The notes under the pieces were generated by a model that did not search any database, was not told where the DNA came from, and saw only the letters and a list, made by a program, of their open reading frames with translations. The position numbers and the translations under genes are program-made. Shown here one piece after another: positions 388-62,869 of a DNA stretch of 64,000 nucleotides. This DNA is from Ophelia neglecta (lineage: Eukaryota). How positions within the stretch are numbered: position 1 is the first letter of the stretch; every line of letters starts with the position of its first letter. The DNA is taken from contig OZ260664.1 in NCBI GenBank assembly GCA_965285935.1, positions 4,092,001-4,156,000 of the forward strand, read 5' to 3'.

Positions 388-1497
388 CTATTTGTTATTT
401 CGCCCCAATGTTGCTTTGATACGTTTGAATGGATTTCTTTGAAGCGGCACTGACTCGTGAGTCACAAAGGAAGAGCTTGTAGAGAATCGCACAGTGAATG
501 TTTCCTTCATAACCCTACGGAATCTTCTTCCGAAGATAAGGTAAATGAAAAAGTTTATAGACGAGTTTATAACCATGAGTAACTGACTCACAACACTGAA
601 TTGTACGAGCCCCTCATCGAATCCTTTTGTAAATATTGCAGCTTTGGTCCTCCTTTCAATGACGGTGACTACTCTGATAAACAGTTCTGGAGTCTCGCAT
701 ATGATGAAAACCAGGACGATTATCACGAGGACTACAGTGGCATTGTTTTCATGGGTATGGGTGTAGTCGCTGTGTCGTCTCTTAGAGCAGCGAATGGCTT
801 GTACAAGCCGAGCGTTCATGTAAGACAACATCAGCAGTGGGAGGATATACAATAATACTATGTAAGAACCCTGTTGGTAAATGTCGTAATAAAGGGGATG
901 GTTGAACTGGGGGCTGATAATACTACGAGTGATAGTAATATTGGTGCAGGGATTGAACCATTCTACAATACAACTCTCAAAGTATCTGGGTAAGTTATAG
1001 AGGAACCCAAGAATATAGACACTTGCCGCTGCTATTTGCTTCGTGCGTTTGTTAAATAGTTGTAAAGCTTTAAATGGCTTACACACGTATATGTACCTAT
1101 CTATAGTCAACAGAACCATGGTCCAAATAGTGATGGTCTGACATGTCTTCAACATGGGAAACACCACTGGCTGCATCAAGATGTAGGTACGGTATACAGG
1201 GAGCAGGTACTTCAGAGGATATCGTAGAACAGCAACAAGCAAATACAATCCATCAGCCACAGCCAGCACCTGAAGAAGTAACAACGCTTCCCGTTTTTCC
1301 TTGTCTCGACGGAACACAATGATAGTCATGACGTTACCAAACAGACCCACCAGACACAGTAGGCCGATCAGGTAAAGTTCAACTATAAACTCCAAACTAA
1401 CTGATAGCTGTTTGTTTATATCCCCAGTTAGGTTTTCATGGTAACGAGGACACTGGGAAATGTTCACCACAGTTAAGCCACAACCCGCGTTAAACAT
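388..1497 (-). CDS. Class A (rhodopsin-like) GPCR, FMRFamide-receptor/Srw-like, paralog 1 (single coding exon, about 369 aa from the first ATG)
   Basis: Seven hydrophobic segments; GLFGN (TM1), LAVAD (TM2), TIDRY.YVCKPF (TM3), YNLPRYFE (TM4), ICETP (TM6), INSSINFFIY.IFGRRFR (TM7/H8). NFxxY in place of NPxxY and the lack of Cys3.25 are typical of FMRFaR-like receptors. The first ATG (1497, MFNAGCG) aligns with the paralog 2 start MPNTGCG; the ORF-track start at 1512 is a TTG. Confidence 0.93.
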   Translation of the reverse strand: MFNAGCGLTVVNISQCPRYHENLTGDINKQLSVSLEFIVELYLIGLLCLVGLFGNVMTIIVFRRDKEKREALLLLQVLAVADGLYLLVAVLRYPLKYLLPVYRTYILMQPVVFPMLKTCQTITIWTMVLLTIDRYIYVCKPFKALQLFNKRTKQIAAASVYILGFLYNLPRYFESCIVEWFNPCTNITITRSIISPQFNHPLYYDIYQQGSYIVLLYILPLLMLSYMNARLVQAIRCSKRRHSDYTHTHENNATVVLVIIVLVFIICETPELFIRVVTVIERRTKAAIFTKGFDEGLVQFSVVSQLLMVINSSINFFIYLIFGRRFRRVMKETFTVRFSTSSSFVTHESVPLQRNPFKRIKATLGRNNK

Positions 1498-1820
1498 GAT
1501 TACGATAATCAATATATTACTGTCTCTTTCCCTCTAATTGCACAAACATCAAACCGTTTTTTTTTTTGGGGGGGGGGGATAAATATCATTTTCTTTGAAG
1601 CATTGGCACATAGACACAAGCGTCAGTGGTTTCTATTAGCGATTCTATCAGCCGATAATCTGGCACCTTTGTTAATGCTGTATTTAATTGAGCCGGTCAC
1701 AATCGCCTTGGCTTGATGGGGGCTGGTCTATTAGTCTGTGAAGTGTAAGAACCCATTAATCACGTCGCTGTACTCATCTGGTCCTTTCACAGGTGTCAAT
1801 AGCATAACTAAACGTTCATT

Positions 1821-26164: not shown

Positions 26165-27214
26165 CTACGTAAAGTGAGTGGTGCTTGTAGGGAACTGCAG
26201 AGTAAATGTTTCCTTCATAACTGTACGAAACATGCGTCCAAAGATTAAGTAAATAAAAAAGTTAATAGATGAGTTGATGACCATCAGTAACTGACTTATG
26301 ATATTTAATTTAAACTTTCCTTTACTGAACCCTGGTGTAAATATGGTGGATTGGGATTTTCTCTCAACGATTGTGGCTAGTCTTAGAAGGAGCTCAGGAG
26401 TCTCACAAATGATAAACACCAGAACGATGACTACTAACACGAGGGTGGCGTTGTTTTCACTGTATCCCGAACGAGTGGAACAATCACGGTGAAATCTTCG
26501 AGATTTTTTAATCGTTTGTACAAGGCAGACATTCATATAAGACAATATCGTCAGAGGTAAGATGTACAACAATAGTAAAGACGCCCCTTGTTGGTAGATA
26601 TCGTAATAGAGTGGATGGTTAAACTGAGGCCTGATGATACTACGGCTGATTGTCATATTGTCACAGGGATTGAACCATTCCACGATGCAGCTCTCAAAGA
26701 ACCTAGGGACGTTATACAGTATTCCTAATATAAAGACGCCCATCGCTGCTCCTTGCTTACTCCTCTTATCAAACAATATGGGCGCTTGGAGAGGCTTACA
26801 CAGGTAGATATACCTGTCGATAGTCACCAGTACCATGGTCCAAATCGTGATTGTCTGGCAGGTCTTCAACATGGGAAACACGACAGGCTGCATCAAGATG
26901 TAGTTACGGTACACAGGTAAGATATACTTGATTGGATATCTTAGAATTGCAGCGAGTAAATACAGACCATCAGCCACCGCTAGAGCCTGAAGTAGTAACA
27001 CTGCTTTTTGTCTGTCTTTATCCCTTCGTAGAACAGCGATTGTAACCAGATTCCCCAATATTCCCACCACACAAACCAGGCCGATCAAATAGAATTCTAC
27101 CAAGCGTTCCAAACTTATTGGCACAAGTCTTGTGGTAACTATGCTTATATTGTCATCGAAACGGGGACACACTGATATGTTTAAAACAGTCAAGCCGCAC
27201 CCCGTGTTAGGCAT
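26165..27214 (-). CDS. Class A GPCR, FMRFamide-receptor/Srw-like, paralog 2 (349 aa, single coding exon)
   Basis: Collinear with paralog 1: GILGN, LAVAD, TIDRY, YNVPRFFESC, ICETP, INSSINFFIY. Candidate 5'-UTR acceptor (ctaaac...ccctttCAG) at 27362. Confidence 0.93.
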   Translation of the reverse strand: MPNTGCGLTVLNISVCPRFDDNISIVTTRLVPISLERLVEFYLIGLVCVVGILGNLVTIAVLRRDKDRQKAVLLLQALAVADGLYLLAAILRYPIKYILPVYRNYILMQPVVFPMLKTCQTITIWTMVLVTIDRYIYLCKPLQAPILFDKRSKQGAAMGVFILGILYNVPRFFESCIVEWFNPCDNMTISRSIIRPQFNHPLYYDIYQQGASLLLLYILPLTILSYMNVCLVQTIKKSRRFHRDCSTRSGYSENNATLVLVVIVLVFIICETPELLLRLATIVERKSQSTIFTPGFSKGKFKLNIISQLLMVINSSINFFIYLIFGRMFRTVMKETFTLQFPTSTTHFT

Positions 27215-45600: not shown

Positions 45601-46248
45601 CAAAACTAGAAACCTTTTTTTTCACTCTTACGAATGAGAATTAATGAGGCTGGGAGGTGTAAGATCTCAAGGGGCAAAGTTGCTCTTCCAAAATAACCTT
45701 TGAAAGTGGCCAAATAGGTTTAATACGAAAAATTACCTGCGGCGCCACTAAACCTCTTTCCTAAAACTGAGACGTATATATGCTTAGTGGGATGGGTGCT
45801 ACCGTGCGTTGTGACTTCAGACAGAACTAATGGAAGGTTATTGGTTGATGATATAACTTCGTCTGCCGGATGTTCACTCCCATTTTCATCGCCTTGAGCA
45901 CGGCCGTTATTACTCTAAGGGGCAATGTGTCACGCAAGTCACGGAGGCAACGTGTTTATTTGCCGCAGCTAATGCCCACTAACATCAGTTAACTAACAGC
46001 AATAAAAAAAGTCGTTTTTGGATATTCTAAGGGAGGAATGGTTTGCCTTAAAATATCAGTAAGAGTTTAAAAGAAAATGACAAAAGCGCTTAATATATTT
46101 CTTTGTTACAAAGATAATACTATTTCTGTGTCAATAATAAAAGGAAATTATATAATTATATTCTCGGGTAAATGGTACCATTGTAGATTCCTTTAAATAT
46201 ATGGGTAGTAAATAAAGGTTTTGCCCAGTACAGTATCAATGTGAAGCA

Positions 46249-46820
46249 TTATGTTAACGTATTTTTTTCTTGAATGGCTCTATTTTCATTGTTAATATCT
46301 ATTCGTTTGGTCCCATCTCGACATAGAAAAGGCAGCCCTCGACGGATATTATATAGTTTATAGAACAACTCAGTGTACAAATGATCACAATAAATCCACT
46401 CCCATCGGTGATACATCAGCTGAAATTTCATCTTTACAACTATAAACAGTAGGTGAAGTGAAAACAAAAGTATTAAAGCTATTGCCATAGCAGCCGCTGG
46501 TATGTCTAAAAGGAGCGGCGCACTACGGCCAAAATGTGACAAAAGAAAGGTTATACGACATGTGATAAACATGCAGACGTACAGAGTGTAAGTAACCACA
46601 GTATAGGGAAACATCCATTTCTTAATATCGTCACTAGAACATCTATTCCCCGTAAATAATCCACATAGAGTACCAGAAGTTACTCCAGTGAAAAATATTA
46701 TGACAAGAACTGGTGTCACAGAATGTGCTATTATAGAAGAAAGCGGAACGGTTATAATGAATATGAGAACAATAACAGTATGTAACACTCCAAATCCAGA
46801 AAACCAGTTCCTCTTAGTTC
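46249..46820 (-). CDS. Multi-pass membrane domain (about 4 TM helices), inferred C-terminus of the cGLR
   Basis: About 190 open codons with no in-frame ATG until roughly a third of the way in, overlapping the end of the NTase frame. Hydrophobic runs: VLHTVIVLIFIITVPLSSIIA, VTPVLVIIFFTGVTSGTLCGLF, MFPYTVVTYTLYVCMFITCRITFLL, LLLDIPAAAMAIALILLFSLHLLFIVV. AATAAA on the minus strand at 45960-45955. Confidence 0.7.
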
Positions 46821-46959
46821 ATGAGCCATCCTCCTCACATGAATTTGAAATTGCTCGGACTCTTTAAATACGGGGTCACCCACCAGCATGTAGCTAGTCA
46901 AGTATGGCAGGGGAGGAGATTCTCTTGTAACGTCTATTTGATACGTGTAATGCGCCATA

Positions 46960-47375
46960 CTGGCCCCTTCCAATATCGTGCTTGCCAGTGTGTTAGTATT
47001 CGCCCTTGTGCATTATTGTGCCCAATCTGTCGCAGGGTGAGTTGAAACAGTGTCTGCCCTAGCAACTTCTTCTACCCTATCTCTGTGTGGGTTGGTATTA
47101 GGGAAGGCAGCCTTTACAGCTTGTTCTACCCTATCTGTCTGTGGGTTGGTATTAGAGGTTTCAGCCCTCACATGTACATCTGCCCTATCCGGTGGCATGC
47201 TGGTATTAGGACTGTCGGCCTTCTCACTTTCCTCGGCCCTGCCCCCATGTTGGTTGATACTGGAGGTATGGATTCTCACACCCTCCATTGCACCCTCCGG
47301 CGGCGTGTTGGTATAGGAGGCGTCATCACTCACACTTGTCTCTGTCCTGTGTGCCTGTCTGTTAGTATCTGGTGT
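46960..47375 (-). repeat. Coding 54-bp (18-aa) degenerate tandem repeat, about 7.5 copies, inside cGLR exon 3
   Basis: The ggtatt-like anchor recurs at 47094, 47148, 47202, 47256, 47310 and 47364 (period 54). Example units: SPNTSMPPDRADVHVRAE / TSNTNPQTDRVEQAVKAA / FPNTNPHRDRVEEVARAD. Confidence 0.85.
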
Positions 47376-47663
47376 TCGGTCGATAGCTTGGAGAACATGT
47401 AGAGCATTTAGATGCCACCGTCCACCGTCCTCCATATCGCCGGCTTTGACTGCCTCTGCAAGGTGAATAACTGCCATCTTTAGGGGGTAGGATCCCATCG
47501 GTGCATCCTCTAGCGAATGGGTATTTGACACGAAACCAGACAGTATCTGAAATATGTACAATTTGCTTAGCTGTGAAGTACAGAATGTATAGTCTAATTC
47601 AAAGAATAGTTTCCTTGAAGAGGAAAATGAAGGGGTTAGTAAAACAAATATTGAAAGACAAAC

Positions 47664-48521
47664 CTTTAATGCTCTGTAAAGGCTTTTACTTTGCTCATCC
47701 AGCCGTTTCATGTATTCTCTCTCGGCAAAACACACTGATAACTTCCAGTAGCTGCCTGAGCAAACGACGTGGAATGTGTTTAAAACGCTGACCGAGTCCG
47801 GCACACGGAGCCACGAACCTTTATGGCGAAGACATGAGTCCATTGTATCCCTAGTGATTTGAAGGGCAAGGGAGAGATCCACTTTGACTACACCTGAATG
47901 AGGTTTGAGGTACATAGTCACCGCTGGGCCCTTTTGTTCAACTCAACAGGGGAGACCTTCCCCTCGACAGGTATTTGCATAACTTTGTACCTCATGCATG
48001 AAATACCTGAAAAGTTCGCCAGACATCAATGTATCATTGTGAAGGAATTGAGGTTCCCAGTCCTGCCGGCTCGCCACTGTGATGTCACAATAAGACTTTG
48101 GATTGTAGCCCCTTATGGTCGACCTGTACTCTGCTAGATGAACACTAAAAATGGTTGGAGATTGTGGCGTCAGAAAAACCAGGAAATCAAACTCGTCCGG
48201 CTCGTTTACCTTGGTTTCCTCGGCCACACTGCCCATAAGCTCCCTGTGGAGAGTGAACTGATCCCCTAGCTTTTGAAGGAGAGGGGCACGTAGGGCGTTT
48301 AGGAACTCGTCAACTACCCTCACCACCGCGGTCTGTACCTTTTGAAGTGTCTTGTTCACTACCGCTATAGATTTGTCACTCAGTGCCTGTATTGTTCGTT
48401 CCATCAGTGCGTGCCGACCTCTTTTAACAATGTAGATATCATTAACCGCCTTCTGTTGGCGGTCATAAAGGGGCCGGTACTCCTCTCTAGATACAAACAT
48501 TCCTGTTTCATCGAATGTGAT
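47664..48521 (-). CDS. cGLR exon 2: nucleotidyltransferase core (contains an in-frame TGA)
   Basis: ORFs 47943..48500 and 47013..47921 are in the same frame: ...GEGLPC*VEQKGPAVTMYL. G-S at 48233-48228, catalytic E/D at 48194-48186, third Asp at 47879-47877; donor AAG|GTTTGT at 47663. Confidence 0.85.
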
Positions 48522-49313
48522 CTGAAAGATGTTTTAAATTGTTCATTCTTATGGTAAATGTTTCTTAAAGCAGACAAACTGGAACAAGTGGATCATACAT
48601 GAGCATGACACGGGCAATCTTGGTGCTTAGCAATATTTGATGTACGTCCTATATTTAAAGGAACTGATTTGTTCCGTGGTTTACCTCAAATCAAAGACCA
48701 CGTTGACTATTGGTCTGAACAGATATCATAATCTATTTTTAAAATTATTTGCTACAATATTAATGAACATCTTTGATATGGGAATTGATATTTTTATATG
48801 GGCCTGTAGCTGGCGGCGTCTGAAGAATTCAGATCGAGTTGATTAATCGATATTCAGATCTAGACACCATTTTGCTTGGAAATGGTGCTAATATATCTTT
48901 GATCATATAAACTGCTTATCTTATTTTATTGAACAAATTACACATTGTAATATCCTATATTAGCATGTATTGATCTATGTTTTGAAAGCGATCATTTTAC
49001 TTTCATTCTAGACATTAGACCTTTCGCCTCGACATATGACACTGAACGTTATATTAGTGCTACTATTACTATCTTTATTATCATTATGGTTATCATGTCA
49101 TGGAATAGTCTACGTGACACAGATCAATTACTCTTGTGTACACAAAGTTGACACATTTACAGTTCTAACCAGGCTGTACATTAGCGTCGGCTCCCGCAGA
49201 CATATACATGAACCGGATGATATAACCTTAATGTACTATTATGATTTAGGCACATAATTAGCCAAATCAAGTGAACACCAAAACCGTGCTTTTATTAATA
49301 AAAAATTACTCAC

Positions 49314-49349
49314 CGGACTAGACAATAATATAGGCCGAGGGCAGCTCAT
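49314..49349 (-). CDS. cGLR coding exon 1 (MSCPRPILLSSP)
   Basis: ATG at 49349, 12 codons, donor CCG|GTGAGT; joins in phase 0 to acceptor atctttCAG|ATC at 48521, giving ...SSP|ITFDETGMFVSREE. Inr-like TCAGT at 49400-49396. Confidence 0.65.
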
Positions 49350-52300
49350 CAAGTAGGTCGTCAATTTCGGTTAAAACATCACCTTAGAGACACAAACTGA
49401 GTGGCGATAGTGCAATTATTTGACTGCATCATCTGATCGTTATAAATACACCACTTCCAGTTACAGTAGTGCAGTTCTGGCTCATATCCAAGGGGACTTT
49501 TTTTTGTCTAGCCGAGAGTTTGTAATATTAATAGGCTGTTAGACTTCATGTTGTTGATGTGTTTACTGAAAGCAAATTGTTTGGGACCTAGTCGCTCAAT
49601 AAATGTAGCAATAGGAAATCGACAACTCGTCGATTAATCCATTAGATGGTCAATTCCGAATCCATACAGAAACAATACAGAACTTTACATTACTTTCATT
49701 TTTAACTTCAAAGCCTGATATGCGGTTACAAAATTTCCTTTTGGTAGCTGCAGATATCGGGAGAAAACATTTAAGATCGCTTAGACAAATAACACTAATT
49801 GCATTGGGATTGTGAAGCCTGTGTAGCTGTTGAAGAAGAGCCACAGTTTTCTACTTTCTTTTAAACATTTCGCAGAACCTACCTTGCAAACATAATATCG
49901 TACTATTCCTTTTTTATTTTAATGTAAGAAAGTTACATATATGTGACACTTTCATTGCAAGAACATGGTATTGTAACCTTGCGAAAATGATTTGTGCTAT
50001 TGTCGAGGAATGGGTGTTTGATAATTAACATGAAATGTTTTTATATTCAATTCTACCCTTACATTTTGAATTGATGAATGATATAGAAAGTTTTGTGTTG
50101 TTTATTGATAAGACAGCGTTATCAAAAATTAACGTGATTAACCTGATATTAAAACGCGTGCATTTTTGACACTTTTCCCTGAAAGGGGGGGGGGGACTTC
50201 TTAGCTTGGAAGGGGAAACCTACCCATCTGCGGCAAATATGAACTCACGCTCCATAATCCACAGATAATTCTGAACCAGAAAATATGTTCAATCATCTTG
50301 GCCTCCTTCGTACAATTAAACGTGACCTGGCTCCTGAACTAGGGCCATCGTGTTCATTTCACGAGCGTCAGCCTCTCCCTTGACATTCTCTTCAGAAATG
50401 ACCTTTGGCAGAGATGCAGGAATCAAAATTACCCTGTAATTGCTTTGATTGTTTTGACATCTTTTCAACAAGTAAAAGATCAGTAGGTACCAAAAATGCA
50501 TAAATGTTAAAGGTTATCTTAGGGAAACTAGCTAGACACAGCTTTGACATACAGCTTTGTTTCACAGACACAGGCAAGCTGGAAAAGGCATTAATGCTTT
50601 TGCTATTGATTATTTTATCTGCTAACTATATGCCTGTATTAGGAGGAGGGGTTCCAACAAGATGACTGCGCCCATGACAAGAACCATAATGTCAACAAAC
50701 AAACCTTAACACGCTTTACAAGCAAGTATTCAGTGGCTAACAGGTTATGCTTACCTTAAGCAATGGGAGTAGCCGGAAGCAATGGGATTTCCTGGTGTGT
50801 GTTGACTTCAATTATTTCGTTAGGAATACCAATGGTTAATTGGTCTGTGGGAGAATCATGAACACTTTAAAATACGTGTTCTTTGATCGCATTGGCTAAG
50901 CTCAGGTTTCTATTTGATTGTTCCCTTTGTCATCAGTTGCTTTGACACCATTTTCCCCTTTTTCTGTAAAATAACAACTAGTTTGGCGGATGTATGAATT
51001 GACAAAACTCCCACATCAAACATTCAGCGCCATAATCATTGTATTTTTCACCATTTACGAATTAGATATTTTATTACCTGAAACCCTCCATTAGTTGATA
51101 ATCATTGTCAATCTGCTCTGGATATTTATGGATGGCACAAAATGTGGGCCACACTGGAATTTTTTACACAAATCAAGCATACATTTAATAGGGGATAGAC
51201 CAAAACAAAGGTTTCCTAATTACGTATGAGTGACAAGTTAATTAACATTTAAATTTTACAGCATTGGTTTGTGTAAAATTGCACCGACATGGCACCACAT
51301 CTACAAATTGTTAGTGGACGTCATGATACGTTTGTAATTGTGGCTAATGAAACCATGCCCACCCTAAAACGTGCATTTCCGGCAGACAAAGCCAAACCAT
51401 TAGTCGAGACCGTCCAAAGTAATTAGGAACCAGCAGCCAAATCAACCAGAAATCATTTGGAACCAGCAGCCAGTTGCTAATGCTTTTTTTGCTTCCTAGA
51501 ACTTCGCACGATGTTTATGTTAAGTGTCACTCCGACTTATCCTGACCTTCATTCCTGCTGATTGTTCTTTTTAATCAGTTCAGGTAATAGCAGGGAACTC
51601 CCTCATATTACATTATACTCATTTATGGCTACAGCGTTACCGATGTGGCGTAGAGAGTATGTTGGATGTTTGTTCTTTTAGGTGATACAACATAAGGGGG
51701 CTTTAAGTTCAAAATCCCGAAGGCATAAGCAACGCAGTTGCACGTTGTAAAGATAATAGCTAATACATCGTATTGGCGTAAAGGAAAGTAATTCATGCAA
51801 CACCACTTTCATTTTTGGGGGGAACGTGTGCAGTCAGTCAGTCCAGACAGTGGCCGAATAAGAATACAAAGTGAAATCCAGGTCGCGTTCAGGGAGTAAA
51901 CGCGTCTAATAAAAATTTTCTTTTGCGAGCAGTTAAACCAATTTAGGGGAATTATGTGATATTAAGGCATACCCTCAGGATCAATGCGCGGTGGACCGGT
52001 CAGAAACATAATGATTTTAGTAATTTCTAAAGATATTTGATGCTGAATTAGTTGGTAAGTCCGTTTATAATACAATATAATTATTATACATTAATTAATT
52101 AATGAAATTTTATATAATGAGAAATATCGTATGGTAACAATCAGGTTTACATTCTTATGTCGTTTCTTATGTAAGTCTTTTAAAATCAGTTCTAAACATG
52201 GTTTATACTCAAGTATACTTGGTGGCATAAAATATATTCTTAGTGCGGAAACAGGTTAAGGCTAGCTTTCGTAATGGGCCAATAGTTCGGTTTTTTGTTT

Positions 52301-56985: not shown

Positions 56986-58072
56986 TTAGCTAAAAACCAT
57001 TGGTGTATCGTTTCTTTGGAGAGAGATTGGTTCACGGGCCACGTGGGTCAATGTGCTAGAGAACCTCACCGTGAATATTTCCTTCATAACATTACGGAAC
57101 CTGCGACCGAAGACATAGTAAATGAAGAAGTTAATTGAGTTTATCACCATAAGTAATTCACTGACAAGGTTGAATCTTACGAGTCCCTTGCTGAATTCCA
57201 GTGTAATTTGGGCGGCTTTGAAGTTCCTCTCCACAAATGCTGCCAGCCTCAGAATCAGTTCAGGCGTCTCACAGATAATAAATACCACGATGATTATAAC
57301 TAAGACAAGTGTGGCGTTGTTCTGGATGTACTGTGGGATTGTGGCGCCTGGAAGTCGGCGTCTTTTCGAGTAGTATATTGCTTGCACCAGGCGACCGTTC
57401 ATATACGATAATATGACGAGGGGCATAATATAAAGTAGTATCATATAAGCCCCCTGCTGGTAGATATCATAATAAAGTGGATGATTAAACTGGGGACTTG
57501 TTACACGGCTGCTGATAGTAGTATTGCTGCAGGGATTAAACCACTCTACAATACAACTATCAAAGTATCTGGGCACATTGTATACAGCACCGACGGAAAA
57601 CACGCTAATGGCTGCCCATTTTCTGGTAGCCCTTTTAAACGTTTGTAGTCCTTTGAAAGGCTTGCATACATAGACATTCCTGTCAACAGTTAGAAGTACA
57701 ACGGTCCAAATAGTGATTGTTTGGCAAGTCTTCAACAGGAGAAACACCACAGGCTGCATCACGACGTAGGCACTGTATACAGGTAAGAGGTATTTTAGAG
57801 GATACCGTAGGACAGCAACAAGCAAATACAATCCATCAGCCACCGCCAGGGTCTGAAGTAGTAACAAGGCCTGTCGTCGTTCCTTGTCGCGATGAAGAAC
57901 AACGAAGGTTACAGGCATTTCCAAATATCCCTATTATACACAAGACGCCTATTAGGTAAAGCTCTACTAAACGCTGTATATTAATTAAAGAATGAGTACA
58001 TATAATATATTGTTCTCCATGTGCTGTCAACATCGTTGGATACAATCTAGATAAGGAAGTATCTGTTGACAT
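56986..58072 (-). pseudogene. GPCR paralog 3, probable pseudogene
   Basis: TM1 (LVELYLIGVLCIIGIFGNA) is in ORF 57836..58078 and the rest is in ORF 56986..57924, because of a 1-nt insertion at about 57914 (gga aat gc[c]t gta acc). Also DRY>DRN (57676-57684), a one-codon deletion in INSSINF>INSINF (about 57137), and an N-terminus lacking the GCG..CP motif. Confidence 0.85.
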
Positions 58073-59481: not shown

Positions 59482-60683
59482 CAGGTATTGCTCTCAGCGG
59501 TCTGAAGATGGCTCTTGATTTGTTTGGTAACTTTATCTTGCTACCTATCAGGCTTAATAGTGTGTTTTTAGATTAAAGTTAAGAGTTCCTACTGAGTTTT
59601 GATATTCCAGATTACGTCCTCTCTTACTTAACATATTTTTATGAATATTAGTCGTAAACATCTTTCAGGCCTTCATTGCCTAGACAGTTTTTTTTTATAT
59701 TGTTCATGAGCTGAGTCCCTGCACTTGTACTACGGTTATATATAGATTTACAGGTAAATATTAAGAGAACCTGTACCCCACATGTGGTCCGGTCCTTGCT
59801 GTGTCGAGGTATATTTTGTTGAGGATATTTTTCTTGTTTCATGTACGTCATTTATTTCTATGATCGGATTATTATATAGTATCTCTTTATTTTTTCATGC
59901 CTGGAATAGATAAAAACTGAATTAAATTGAAAACATTCTGTTAAATATTGATAAGATTACTTCTCTGATTGAAATACTAACTGTTAGTTATTGCTTCAAT
60001 TGGTATTTCTAAATAACTGCAAATTTGATGAATCGTTTCCACTTTTTTCCACAAGTACCACAAAAGCTGACATGATATCCGTTCGTCTTCAATGGAATAG
60101 TTATATCTTCCAGGAATCCGGTTCTTCGTTTTGTGTTTACTCGGCACGATACAGCAACCGTTGGTGCCTACTTACGAGTCATGGGAAAGTCTGAAGCTTG
60201 CAGAGAACACCAGGTATAACAAATTTATTGCTACTGGTAGACACATACGCCCACCTGCTACACGACATCATACAATATACAAAGACAGTATGGTAGAATC
60301 CGGCGCTGTCTTGGTATGACAATTATGCGTGGGCGGAGTACGGGTATTTACGGGCAAAGTGGGAGTATTTGCAGATTTGCAGCGAAATAAACTTCACTTT
60401 CCATGGACGGTGGGTGGTGGGAGGGGGTGCATAGGTAATTTCCTGGTGGCGATGGGGGGGGGGATGAGCTTCGAGCATTAGTAAACTATATGGGGAGGTA
60501 AAATGTCAAAACCACGAGGGTGGGCCAGGGGGGGGGGGGGGCAGATGCCATATAGTCCGAAATGTGAGAATGGTGGGCTTTCGCCGCGCAGCTTATATAC
60601 AAAAGCAAGAATAAGGGGCAGCTCACTGAGAGAGGAGAATTACTAGTGGTTGGTCCTGAATATATAGAATAATCCGCTATAAG

Positions 60684-61008
60684 TTGTTGTTTGGCATTGT
60701 TTTACGTGACTTTCAACACTTATCTGGTCATATCTCCCCGGTGTCTACTTGTGACAGTGGGCCCAATGCCCTCTTTAGAGTGCTGCCTCACTGGAGTACC
60801 TGCCGTAGACACCAGACAGGGAACCCCACCCAGTCACATTATACTGACACCGGGTTGACCAGTCCTGATACTACCTCCGAAATACCGGGCGCCTGGCAGG
60901 GCAGCTATCAGTACCTATTTTTACGTCTTGGGTTTGACGCGATCGGGATTCGAACCCCGATCTACCACTTGCGAGGCGGACACCCTAACCACTCGGCCAC
61001 GCTTTGGT
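60684..61008 (-). mobile_element. Full-length tRNA-derived SINE with a Meta/MESC-type core
   Basis: Minus strand: A box TGGCCGAGTGG, B box GGTTCGAATCC, core GACTGGTCAACCCGGTGTCAGTATAATGTGACTGGGTGG...CAGTGAGGCAGCACT, tail gttgaaagtcacgtaaaacaatgccaaacaacaa; TSD tccgctata/tag (60673-60683 / 61009-61019). Confidence 0.9.
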
Positions 61009-62869
61009 TCCGCTATTAGAAGATGGCCTTACGTTTCTTATATTAACGAATATGAGATGACACGTGTACTAAATAAGCGCTTTTAAAATACTGTATATTC
61101 AAGCCTCCCTGTTGTAAACACAACTGGTCCAACGTCAAATCAATTAGTCCACACACAAGAATGATGTGCAATTTCAAAACCCTTTTACACACATGCATTC
61201 TTATATCAACGTTTTAAGAGTGGTAAAACTACGGGTTCTAAACCTTGTTCCAGGCAAGCCTGCTCACACCGCTTTACAGATTACCCGCTGTCCATCAAAC
61301 ACATTTGTTATAGTGAGGCTCGTCGGCATACCAGTTTCCCGCCAAGATGTTCATCCTACCACAATAGAGACCAAGCGGCGAATAAAAATAAAAATTGACC
61401 CCATTACCTTACGATTAAAATTTGTGACTCAAAGAGTCACTATATCGACCTGGTTGGTGTCTGGACAATCGAGCGGGCGCCAGTTCGAGCGGTGGCTATA
61501 CTGGTCGTTTCGAGCGGGGACATCGGACGTTTCGAGCGGGGCCAGATCTAGTTATTTATGATAGTAAGCAGTTCCAGTTATATGTGATACAGTGTACATG
61601 CGACTTTTCGAGTCTTTGGGAGCTCCCTGTGAAACAGACTGATTTGGAAATGAAACAACACTTACAGCGTAAATATGCACCTAACTCGTACAAGTTCGAA
61701 GAGAATAACTGTGAAAAATTAAGTAATTAAGTCACTGTATTTAGTACCATACCATAGTTAGCATACCGTGCTTATGAATAGAATTTTTCTGTATGAATAA
61801 AATGGTTTTTGATACAATTGGTCTGGTACGAATTTTTCTTCTGTGATCAATAAATAAAGTGAATTCGCTCCAAACGCTGAAAATTGCAAATACTTTGCGG
61901 ACAATTTCTCTACAAGTGCCAGGAGATGTTTTGGAGAATTCGTGATGTATTGTAGATACTATTACCCAGGGTACATTGATGAGATATTACACCGTACTAA
62001 AACTAATTGTTTAAAATGATATAAGTTGCGTCACCGAAAAAAGGTGTCTGCACTAATTAACTCCAATCAGACGGAGATAATGGCGGAAAATGTTGGTTAT
62101 TATGAGCTTATGTATCCTTATATTTAATAAAAGCTTTCCTTATATTAATAAATATAAGGTTAATTTGGCCACGAAGTGACCTGCATTAGTATACCAGCAA
62201 AATGTCCTGAATGAAGAACACTTTTTATCTAAAACATTGAACTAGACTGGGTAAACCTGTGTAATGTCCCCCGCCTTAAACCAACAGTTGTTCGGGTTAT
62301 TGAGTAATTCACAATATATACAGGTTCTGTTGCCAGGGCAACTAAACTATCTCCATTTTTTTTTAATTACAGCCCCACTCTTGAAGAGCTTTCGTCATCC
62401 CCAAGATACCCATGGAATCACTCTCATAGGGAGGCAAAGAACTAATTTCGCATCATCTTAATTATATATGCTGTCCAAATGCTACCAAACTAGCTTCACG
62501 AAGTAAAGCATAAAACCCTAGCAATGCAAGCTGATTGCTAGACAGGCTAGAGGAAATGGCTGATTCAACTTTCACCTCTAACATTTTATAAGATGCAATA
62601 ATGTAGTTACCTATAGATTCCAGGGTAGTTCTAAGTTTTAGCTAAGTCTGACTTGCTTTTCTATTTGTCTTGAAATGGACCCCAAACTCAAATTTGAGAA
62701 CTATATAAAATGCCAAAGATATACTTCCCATAGGCTTCCATTCCAGATCCAAGTGATCCAGCCATTACTACTTACTGAGATAACTTCCTTATACTACTGA
62801 TATATACTACTTGCAAATACTACTTCACATATTATATAATACTTTATCCTTATACTACTTTGTAAATGT

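What the first reader, a model, noticed from the sequence alone, without database searches (positions are those of the whole stretch)
46249..49349. cGAS-like receptor (Mab-21 NTase) apparently fused to a C-terminal ~4-TM membrane domain
Seen: four ORF-track fragments plus a 36-nt first exon join into one ~730-aa reading path: NTase core, Mab-21 C-lobe, about 4 hydrophobic helices, then a short basic tail. The G-S loop and E-x-D...D triad (GSVAEETKVNEPDEFD; KVDLS) are intact. Established: cGLRs make cyclic-dinucleotide second messengers, and the membrane-anchored Mab-21 relatives I know well (MiD49/51, ITPRIP) carry an N-terminal anchor. Receptors and effectors of this pathway (STING, CBASS 2TM/4TM effectors) are separate multi-pass proteins. 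Inference: this may be an undescribed class of membrane-embedded cGLR, either a synthase-effector fusion or a synthase gated by a membrane sensor. I cannot confirm novelty without a search.
Basis: partly seen in the sequence, partly recalled or inferred. Interest (0 to 1): 0.85.

Follow-up and report, generated by a model that had tools for sequence, protein, structure and literature searches.

The report
Membrane-anchored cGAS-like enzyme, damaged copy
This locus is a damaged copy of a gene from a small invertebrate family in which a cGAS-like immune signalling enzyme is fused to a four-helix membrane domain. That architecture appears undescribed for this otherwise soluble sensor family.

Summary
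The pieces are real and lie on the minus strand. The assembled copy is broken in three places:
- an in-frame TGA (47943-47945) inside the enzyme domain;
- an in-frame TAA (47013-47015) in the linker;
- a frameshift at 46804/46805.

Contigs from public runs carry a 7-nt insertion at the frameshift site that restores the frame, so that lesion is allelic.

The fusion is genuine. Five intact paralogs in this genome carry the end of the Mab-21 C-lobe, a linker, a conserved juxtamembrane motif, about four TM helices and a W-E-W tail in one open exon. That exon follows an NTase exon after a conserved phase-0 intron. Full-length homologs exist in Lingula, Lineus and one single-ORF contig.

The NTase matches Pfam Mab-21 and cGAS structures. 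The G-S, E-x-D and D catalytic residues are invariant in 10 family sequences.

The TM domain has no Pfam family and no specific structural match; it looks like a generic four-helix bundle. Its conserved residues sit on the predicted cytosolic face.

Most likely these are membrane-tethered cGLRs that signal locally; that is inferred. I found no description of this architecture in the searchable literature. It is a new variant of a known kind.

The parts
49314..49349 (-). Putative 36-nt first coding exon: ATG followed by a GTGAGT donor. Unverified.
   Evidence: Read from the sequence. No RNA run holds the locus. At least one paralog (C7:6.80 Mb) has no early ATG in exon 1, so a short upstream coding exon is plausible for the family.
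47664..48521 (-). Exon 1: spine helix, NTase core and first part of the C-lobe. It starts after a TTTCAG acceptor (in-exon ATG at 48500) and ends ...L-K before a GT donor.
   Evidence: Pfam Mab-21 34.2 bits when read through one TGA. The exon end and phase are conserved in 5 paralog/ortholog loci.
48186..48233 (-). G-S loop and E-x-D catalytic motif.
   Evidence: The residues are invariant in 10 family sequences and align with the G-S...N-E-F-D motif of human cGAS.
47943..47945 (-). In-frame TGA stop inside the NTase domain. Paralogs have CGA (Arg) at this codon.
   Evidence: Its state on the other haplotype is unresolved: contigs of runs X1 and X3 end at 47944.
47862..47888 (-). Strand carrying the third catalytic Asp (V-K-V-D-L-S-L-A-L).
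   Evidence: The Asp is invariant in the family and aligns with the V-D-I-T-L-A-L strand of cGAS.
47547..47663 (-). Intron of 117 nt, GT..AG, phase 0. It is open in frame, which is why the mechanical ORF runs through it.
   Evidence: A GT donor directly follows the L-K codons at five paralog or ortholog loci.
47382..47546 (-). Start of exon 2: the remaining C-lobe helices (S-Y-P-L-K region).
   Evidence: Alignments. The homologous stretch matches Pfam Mab-21_C above cut-off in P0005 (26.7 bits) and just below it in P0017 (23.4 vs 24.1 bits).
47013..47381 (-). Thr/Asn/Pro- and acid-rich repeat linker. It holds a 54-nt tandem repeat at 47071-47189 and ends in the in-frame TAA at 47013-47015.
   Evidence: Similar in-frame linkers occur in the paralogs at C5:19.59 Mb and C7:6.80 Mb; the linker is reduced to a short remnant or absent in the others. 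The TAA stretch is identical in contigs of three runs.
46830..46901 (-). Juxtamembrane motif (L-T-S-Y ... D-P-x-F-K-E-S ... R-R), the best conserved block among the paralogs' exon 2.
   Evidence: In the model of the homolog P0005 it forms one long helix continuous with TM1.
46804..46805 (-). Frameshift site. The assembled haplotype lacks 7 nt that contigs of runs X1 and X3 carry.
   Evidence: table 4. With those 7 nt the frame is open from after the TAA to the end of the gene.
46738..46809 (-). TM helix 1, with a conserved G..H-T at its cytosolic start.
   Evidence: AlphaFold model m256de01de94d, pLDDT 76. Coordinates, conservation.
46642..46716 (-). TM helix 2.
46531..46608 (-). TM helix 3.
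46432..46518 (-). TM helix 4, with a conserved His.
46378..46410 (-). Conserved H-R-W-E-W-x-[FY]-x-D motif just after TM4, on the predicted cytosolic side.
46249..46377 (-). Short basic C-terminal tail and the TAA stop at 46249-46251.

Best explanation
The locus is one member of a small gene family found so far in spiralian invertebrates: this genome, the brachiopod Lingula, the nemertean Lineus, and several unnamed assemblies.

Shown:
- The family encodes a catalytically competent cGAS-like nucleotidyltransferase (a cGLR-type Mab-21 enzyme) joined in one polypeptide to a C-terminal four-helix transmembrane domain.
- The copy in the window is a null or decaying allele. A CGA-to-TGA stop sits in the enzyme domain, a TAA sits in the linker, and the assembled haplotype has a 7-nt deletion that the other allele lacks.

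Inferred, for the intact members:
- There is no signal peptide, so the enzyme sits in the cytosol.
- TM1 to TM4 cross the membrane with both ends on the cytosolic side.
- The conserved juxtamembrane helix, the G..H-T start of TM1 and the W-E-W motif after TM4 form a module on the cytosolic face.
- The membrane domain acts mainly as a tether, and possibly as an oligomerisation module. It holds the sensor at a particular membrane, so that ligand sensing and second-messenger synthesis for STING (which this genome has) happen locally.
- This would resemble prenylated OAS1 p46 on endomembranes or lipid-bound cGAS at the plasma membrane.
For: Architecture:
- The C-lobe end, linker, juxtamembrane motif, TM helices and W-E-W tail form one open frame in five paralogs.
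- Each follows an NTase exon after a conserved phase-0 GT intron.
- The same order holds in P0005 (717 aa, a single ORF on a 2381-nt contig), Lineus XP_064625109.1 and Lingula XP_013418578.1.
- It also holds on contigs from two unnamed assemblies.

Enzyme:
- Pfam Mab-21 scores 28-51 bits in the paralogs and 34.2 bits in the window.
- The family profile matches human cGAS at E 1.9e-18, with the catalytic residues aligned.
- The P0005 model matches cGAS structures at Foldseek E 5e-13, TM-score 0.61-0.70.
- G-S, E-x-D and D are invariant in 10 sequences.

Membrane domain:
- The model has four helices, pLDDT 76.
- Lys/Arg residues cluster before TM1, in the TM2-TM3 loop and after TM4 (sequence).
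- N-x-T sequons and Cys pairs lie in the TM3-TM4 loop of paralogs and homologs.
- The conserved positions lie mainly on the predicted cytosolic side.

Tether model:
- A repeat linker of 0 to about 110 residues lies between the enzyme and the membrane module.

Pathway:
- The genome has at least 79 Mab-21 matches and several STING ligand-binding-domain matches.

Lesions.
Against: - There is no RNA evidence for this locus or its paralogs.
- No enzymatic, localisation or ligand data exist.
- Conserved polar residues inside or at the edge of the membrane (His at the start of TM1, His in TM4, the W-E-W motif) suggest the TM domain does more than anchor.
- The full-length model is of low confidence (pLDDT 56), so the relative position of the domains is unknown.
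- The allelic state of the TGA is unresolved. If it is polymorphic, the TAA in the linker could yield a soluble enzyme rather than a null.
- Between the two closest paralogs the TM region shows dN/dS of about 0.8, which is weak constraint. Gene-conversion patches blur this estimate.
Confidence: 0.6

Rival explanations
1. The TM domain is an effector or a gate, not a passive anchor. Either the four-helix bundles assemble into a pore or channel controlled by the enzyme, or by its product. Or the bundle senses a membrane state (damage, fusion, lipid composition, an ion) and switches the synthase on. These are the reader's two ideas.
For: - Conserved polar residues at or in the membrane: H-T at the start of TM1, His in TM4, W-E-W after TM4.
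- The best structural look-alikes include the four-helix TM domains of pentameric ligand-gated channels, at Z 9-10.5.
- The juxtamembrane motif is the most conserved block of exon 2 among the paralogs.
Against: - Z of about 10 is within the noise for helical bundles, and designed soluble bundles score the same.
- Foldseek and the Atlas gave nothing.
- No cyclic-dinucleotide-binding domain is present.
- The predicted outward-facing loops are short in the window copy and variable across the family.
- A repeat linker of up to about 110 residues, probably flexible, separates the enzyme from the membrane module in some paralogs, which argues against tight allosteric coupling.
Confidence: 0.15
2. 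The family is a non-enzymatic membrane scaffold that merely has the Mab-21 fold, as MiD49/51 on mitochondria do. It would recruit partners rather than make a second messenger.
For: - Several Mab-21 relatives are scaffolds (general knowledge).
Against: - G-S, both acidic residues of E-x-D and the third Asp are invariant in all 10 family sequences. These span at least three phyla and several paralogs, and the residues align with the catalytic residues of cGAS.
- By profile, the nearest solved relatives are cGAS and cGLR1. MAB21L1 and MiD49/51 do not appear at E <= 0.01.
Confidence: 0.1
3. At this particular locus the TAA in the linker is not decay but a switch. On a haplotype with CGA instead of TGA, the gene would produce a soluble cGLR that has shed its membrane domain.
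For: - The TAA lies exactly between the complete Mab-21 domain and the membrane module.
- It appears in contigs of all three runs, with no variant.
- All 16 family-invariant NTase residues are retained.
- Contigs of two runs end at 47944, which is compatible with a SNP in the TGA codon.
Against: - The assembled haplotype has the TGA at residue 186 of the NTase, which truncates the enzyme.
- On the other allele the TM frame downstream of the TAA is still fully open. That fits a recent loss rather than an old soluble gene.
- There is no RNA evidence.
- All three runs come from one sample.
Confidence: 0.1
4. The fusion is an artefact: two neighbouring genes (an NTase and a small TM protein) merged by ORF reading or by automatic gene models.
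For: - Automatic gene models can merge neighbours.
- One database ORF (P0006) does run from the TM exon of one gene into the NTase exon of the next gene in a tandem array.
Against: - The boundary between the Mab-21 C-lobe and the TM domain lies inside a single exon and a single open frame in five paralogs and in many ORFs from other assemblies.
- P0005 is one ORF on one 2381-nt contig.
- No splicing is needed to join the C-lobe to the TM domain.
Confidence: 0.03

Closest known systems
cGAS-like receptors (cGLRs), including cGAS and insect or oyster cGLR1
   Same: - Mab-21 NTase domain and C-lobe.
- G-S, E-x-D and D catalytic residues that align with those of cGAS.
- cGAS fold in the model.
- A large cGLR expansion and STING genes in the same genome.
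   Different: Described cGLRs are soluble. Some carry ankyrin, TPR, death or extra cGLR domains (PMC9980059). This family adds a conserved juxtamembrane motif and a C-terminal four-helix TM domain that has no Pfam family. At word level it is so diverged that word-seeded protein searches found almost nothing.
MiD49/MiD51 (and ITPRIP/ITPRIPL, TMEM102), the membrane-associated Mab-21 relatives of vertebrates
   Same: A Mab-21 fold attached to a membrane.
   Different: From general knowledge, not tested here: MiD49/51 have a single N-terminal anchor and lack catalytic activity. The family here has a C-terminal four-pass domain and keeps every catalytic residue. MiD and MAB21L1 chains do not appear among the profile hits at E <= 0.01. 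I did not check the TMEM102 architecture.
OAS1 p46 (C-terminal prenylation) and cGAS N-terminal phosphoinositide binding
   Same: The functional analogy I favour: a nucleotidyltransferase-fold sensor placed on a membrane so that it senses and signals locally. This rests on general knowledge.
   Different: Those use a lipid modification or a lipid-binding tail, not an integral multi-pass domain. OAS1 belongs to a different NTase subfamily.
STING (4 TM + cyclic-dinucleotide-binding domain) and CBASS TM effectors
   Same: A four-helix membrane domain within the same signalling pathway.
   Different: In those proteins the membrane domain is fused to the receptor, not the synthase. No STING ligand-binding or SAVED domain is found in this gene. 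STING does not appear among the structural matches listed.

Membership tests
cGLR (active cGAS-like Mab-21 nucleotidyltransferase) | Pfam Mab-21 NTase domain (PF03281) above the curated cut-off | tested here: met
   Window read-through: 34.2 bits against 24.1, with one TGA inside. Paralogs: 27.9-50.9 bits. Full-length homologs: 25.8-39.8 bits. The separate window ORF pieces alone score below the cut-off.
cGLR (active cGAS-like Mab-21 nucleotidyltransferase) | cGAS-type bilobed fold | tested here: met
   Tested on the natural full-length homolog P0005, not on the window protein. Foldseek against cGAS structures gave E 5e-13 to 3e-11 and target-normalised TM-score 0.61-0.70. The family profile against human cGAS gave E 1.9e-18. 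The model is of modest confidence (pLDDT 56 overall, 70-85 in the core).
cGLR (active cGAS-like Mab-21 nucleotidyltransferase) | Complete active site: G-S loop, [E/D]-x-[E/D] and a third acidic residue | tested here: met
   Window 48186-48233 and 47862-47888. The residues are invariant in 10 family sequences and align with the cGAS catalytic residues.
cGLR (active cGAS-like Mab-21 nucleotidyltransferase) | Ligand-triggered synthesis of a nucleotide second messenger that activates STING | not testable with these tools
   Only context is available: the genome has STING ligand-binding-domain matches.
cGLR (active cGAS-like Mab-21 nucleotidyltransferase) | Intact coding sequence at this locus | tested here: not met
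   TGA at 47943-47945, TAA at 47013-47015, and a 7-nt deletion at 46804/5 on the assembled haplotype. The five paralogs are open.
MiD49/MiD51-type membrane Mab-21 scaffold | Single N-terminal TM anchor and loss of catalytic residues | tested here: not met
   No N-terminal hydrophobic segment in P0005, P0020 or P0030. The TM helices are C-terminal. The catalytic residues are invariant.
STING / CBASS TM effector | A cyclic-nucleotide-binding domain (STING LBD, SAVED) attached to the TM domain | tested here: not met
   No such Pfam match in the window pieces, the paralog exons or the full-length homologs.
Pentameric ligand-gated ion channel TM domain | Four-helix TM bundle preceded by an extracellular beta-sandwich ligand-binding domain, with a specific structural match | tested here: inconclusive
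   These are the top VIA-align rows (Z 9-10.5, rmsd 3.4-4.2 A over 120-128 residues), but they tie with designed soluble bundles and fall below the level that is meaningful for helical bundles. Foldseek found nothing. There is no extracellular domain.

The most novel reading that the evidence does not exclude
The four-helix domain with its conserved cytosolic-face module is a membrane-state sensor. It would detect, for example, viral fusion, pore formation, a lipid or an ion, and directly switch on cyclic-nucleotide synthesis. That would make this the first cGLR whose activating signal is read in the membrane rather than from cytosolic nucleic acid. A variant of the idea: the bundles assemble into a conduit that exports the product.
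Probability: 0.12. Interest if true: 0.9.

Novelty: new variant of a known kind. Interest (0 to 1): 0.6.

Why it matters
cGLRs are treated as soluble cytosolic pattern-recognition enzymes, with the membrane step of the pathway assigned to STING. A conserved family in which the synthase itself is an integral membrane protein, kept across at least brachiopods, nemerteans and this genome, would show that animals have also placed the sensing and synthesis step on a membrane.

This gives a testable question: which membrane is it, which ligand, and does local synthesis next to STING matter? It also shows that domain surveys based on named domains miss membrane fusions.

The window copy illustrates how quickly such immune paralogs decay, or segregate as null alleles, in a highly heterozygous invertebrate.

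Tried and rejected
- **Pfam on the separate window ORFs** gave only sub-threshold Mab-21 (12 bits). The domain scored above cut-off only on the paralog exons and on a read-through of the window copy.
- **Word-seeded protein searches** found almost nothing: P0005 residues 440-717, P0005 residues 100-470, and exon 1 of the C2 paralog. The family is too diverged for shared 5-mers.
- **TM-domain fold searches** gave no specific match: Foldseek PDB, ESM Atlas by shape and by features. VIA-align wide gave only generic four-helix bundles.
- **A combined alignment** of full-length proteins with exon-1 and exon-2 fragments misaligned the NTase fragments twice. I therefore folded P0005 with the 10-row alignment A5, which left the TM part of that model weak.
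- **Alternate haplotig.** A search of the assembly to read the other allele of the TGA codon found none.
- **Synteny with the GPCR** next to the homolog in L018: the receptors are unrelated.
- **dN/dS** between the two closest paralogs is blurred by gene conversion.
- **Supplements of the cGLR survey.** The Lingula accession was not found, but the files are cut, so this is inconclusive. The journal version is not held.
- **Joined proteins.** Exons were used by reference, and a natural full-length homolog stood in.
Full report
**What is in the window.**

The window is G000:C7:4092001-4156000 of a 762-Mb eukaryotic assembly. On the minus strand between 46249 and 48521 lie four mechanical ORFs:
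- 47943-48500 holds the G-S...E-x-D motif.
- 47013-47921 holds the V-D-L-S-L-A-L strand, the rest of the Mab-21 domain and a repeat-rich linker.
- 46752-46973 holds a motif L-T-S-Y...D-P-V-F-K-E-S.
- 46249-46788 is strongly hydrophobic.

The first three are in one frame. They are separated by:
- a TGA at 47943-47945;
- a 117-nt stretch (47547-47663) bounded by GT and AG, which is an intron;
- a TAA at 47013-47015.

The fourth piece is in another frame.

**The window copy is damaged, and one lesion is allelic.**

At the TGA, two paralogs read TGC CGA ATT where the window reads TGT TGA GTT. It is probably a nonsense mutation at a CpG, inside a conserved stretch of the NTase.

I laid the contigs of three public runs (one sample, coded X1-X3) on 46100-49500.
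- Contigs of X1 and X3 carry 7 extra bases behind 46804, plus nearby SNPs.
- With that allele applied, translation runs without a stop from just after the TAA through the juxtamembrane motif and all TM helices to the natural stop.
- The frameshift is therefore a 7-nt deletion on the assembled haplotype. It could also be an assembly slip.
- The TAA region (46979-47472) is identical in all three runs.
- The TGA could not be read. Contigs of two runs end at 47944, which would fit a SNP at 47945 but does not prove one.
- The assembly has no second haplotig.
- No RNA run holds the locus.

Apart from these lesions the copy keeps all 16 residues that are invariant in the family alignment. Inactivation is therefore recent, or still segregating. 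DNA identity to the nearest paralogs is only 67-69%, so this is an old paralog, not a fresh duplicate.

**The fusion is real.**

Searching the genome with the pieces found five further loci: C5:19.59 Mb, C5:19.61 Mb, C7:6.80 Mb, C2:105.69 Mb and C8:31.41 Mb.
- In each, an NTase exon ends ...L-K directly before a GT.
- A short intron follows, then one long open exon of 280-508 codons.
- That exon encodes, in order, the last C-lobe helices, a linker of variable length, the juxtamembrane motif, the hydrophobic helices, and an H-R-W-E-W-type motif with a short tail.
- The junction between the Mab-21 C-lobe and the membrane domain lies inside one exon and needs no splicing.

A profile of the five exon-2 sequences was run against 1.84 billion representative proteins and found only 35 relatives. 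Most are exon-sized ORFs from unannotated eukaryotic contigs.

Three are full-length proteins with an N-terminal Mab-21 domain and the C-terminal TM domain:
- P0005, 717 aa, one ORF on a 2381-nt contig of SRR19644540, probably a transcript;
- Lineus longissimus XP_064625109.1;
- Lingula anatina XP_013418578.1.

The two RefSeq entries are named 'uncharacterized protein'.

Where I fetched upstream sequence on contigs from other assemblies, an NTase-homologous stretch lay directly upstream on the same strand for several TM exons. One locus is a tandem pair (L020). For other TM exons in L020, L021 and L023, no upstream NTase was detected. At L017 the TM exon lies at the contig end, so it could not be checked.

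**The enzyme part is a cGAS-like, apparently active NTase.**

- Paralog exons score 27.9-50.9 bits on Pfam Mab-21 (cut-off 24.1).
- The window scores 34.2 bits when read through its TGA.
- A profile of ten family sequences matches human cGAS at E 1.9e-18 and insect cGLR1 at 2e-16. The G-S, E-F-D and V-D motifs align with the cGAS catalytic residues.
- MAB21L1 and MiD49/51 do not reach E 0.01 in that search.
- An AlphaFold model of P0005 has overall pLDDT 56 and a core of 70-85. It matches cGAS structures at Foldseek E 5e-13, target-normalised TM-score 0.61-0.70.
- G-S, E, D and the third D are invariant in all ten sequences.
- None of the three full-length proteins has an N-terminal hydrophobic segment. 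By inference, the enzyme is cytosolic.

**The membrane part.**

The window's own TM piece (46252-46815) was folded with a 32-row family alignment.
- The model has four long helices and two short C-terminal ones, pLDDT 76, pTM 0.64.
- Hydropathy finds about four segments in most family members.
- No Pfam family matches.
- Foldseek against the PDB and the ESM Atlas gave nothing.
- The exhaustive aligner gave Z 9-10.5 to TM domains of Cys-loop channels. It gave the same to designed soluble bundles, which is within the noise the tool states for helical bundles.
- I read it as a generic up-down four-helix bundle with no detectable known relative.

Topology:
- In the window piece, Lys/Arg residues cluster before TM1, in the TM2-TM3 loop and after TM4.
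- N-x-T sequons occur in the paralogs' TM3-TM4 loop, and paired cysteines in that loop of several paralogs and homologs.
- Both observations fit an N-in/C-in topology with that loop facing the lumen or the outside.

Conserved positions:
- They include G..H-T at the start of TM1, L-Y in the TM2-TM3 loop, a His in TM4 and W-E-W-x-F-x-D after TM4.
- Most of them lie on the predicted cytosolic side.
- The outward loops are short and variable.
- In the P0005 model the juxtamembrane motif and TM1 form one continuous helix.

**How it most likely works.**

Shown: a complete, conserved cGAS-type active site and an integral membrane domain sit in one polypeptide. The genome has a large Mab-21 expansion (at least 79 matches) and STING genes.

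Inferred: intact members are membrane-resident cGLRs. Their TM domain fixes them to a particular membrane and may bring copies together, so that sensing and second-messenger synthesis are local.

I prefer this to tight allosteric gating for three reasons:
- In three paralogs and in the window copy, a repeat linker separates the enzyme from the membrane module. It reaches about 110 residues and is probably disordered. It is reduced to a short remnant in one paralog and absent in the other two.
- No cyclic-nucleotide-binding domain is present.
- The outward-facing loops are minimal.

The conserved polar residues and the very conserved juxtamembrane motif remain unexplained by a plain anchor. They keep the sensor or gate reading alive at about 15%.

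**Known or new.**

- The cGLR survey (PMC9980059) reports that 87% of cGLRs have no appended domain and lists ankyrin, TPR, death-domain and multi-cGLR fusions. Its domain table is a list of CDD hits, which cannot see an unnamed TM domain.
- Its text uses 'transmembrane' only for STING.
- The eukaryotic CD-NTase evolution paper (PMC10732462), a 2024 review, a 2025 choanoflagellate preprint and a molluscan immunome paper likewise mention TM domains only for STING.
- I could not establish whether the Lingula protein is in the survey's list, because the held supplement files are cut.
- Vertebrate membrane-linked Mab-21 relatives (MiD49/51, ITPRIP-like, TMEM102; PMC2794190) differ in anchor position. 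For MiD, from general knowledge, they also lack catalysis.
I did not test it.

On this basis the family is a new variant of a known kind, and the window copy is a damaged member of it.

**Limits.**

- All read evidence comes from one sample, as contigs.
- There is no expression data.
Exons were used by reference, and the natural homolog P0005 stood in for the full-length fold.

Noticed in passing
window 388-1512 (-), 26165-27214 (-), 56986-57924 (-): Three paralogous, apparently intronless class-A GPCR ORFs (374, 349 and 312 aa) flank the locus. The third starts late and may be truncated. A GPCR also neighbours the homolog in L018, but it is unrelated (23% identity).
   Followed up: partly
window 47071-47189, and the paralog linkers in L007:511-1698 and L013:1474-3000: The linker between the C-lobe and the membrane module is built of degenerate T-N-T-P...acidic repeats (54-nt period in the window). 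It is long in three copies, reduced to a short remnant in the C5:19.61 Mb paralog, and absent in two. It looks like a rapidly changing tether.
   Followed up: partly
L020:816-5017 (contig of ENA assembly ERZ25069296): Two genes of the family lie in tandem. The database ORF P0006 (562 aa) runs from the TM exon of the first gene into the NTase exon of the second, whose E-x-D region looks degenerate.
   Followed up: partly
window 46100-49500: The contigs of the runs differ from the assembly at roughly 1-2% of positions and mix two haplotypes, with a very divergent stretch at 49326-49469. The locus is highly heterozygous.
   Followed up: partly
G000, e.g. C12:5.58-6.13 Mb, C8:17.14-17.18 Mb, C7:2.68-6.57 Mb: There are at least 79 Mab-21 matches, many in clusters and inside open frames of 500-1200 codons. 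STING ligand-binding-domain matches lie on C1 and C9. This is a large cGLR expansion with other architectures that I did not examine.
   Followed up: no
G000:C5:19592448-19594560 and C5:19612987-19614835: Two paralogs 20 kb apart are identical at the nucleotide level over the 40-codon juxtamembrane block but diverged elsewhere. This suggests gene conversion.
   Followed up: partly
window 60001-62000: A locally GC-richer stretch (0.44 against about 0.37) holds two plus-strand ORFs (60684-61019, 61166-61561) of unknown nature.
   Followed up: no
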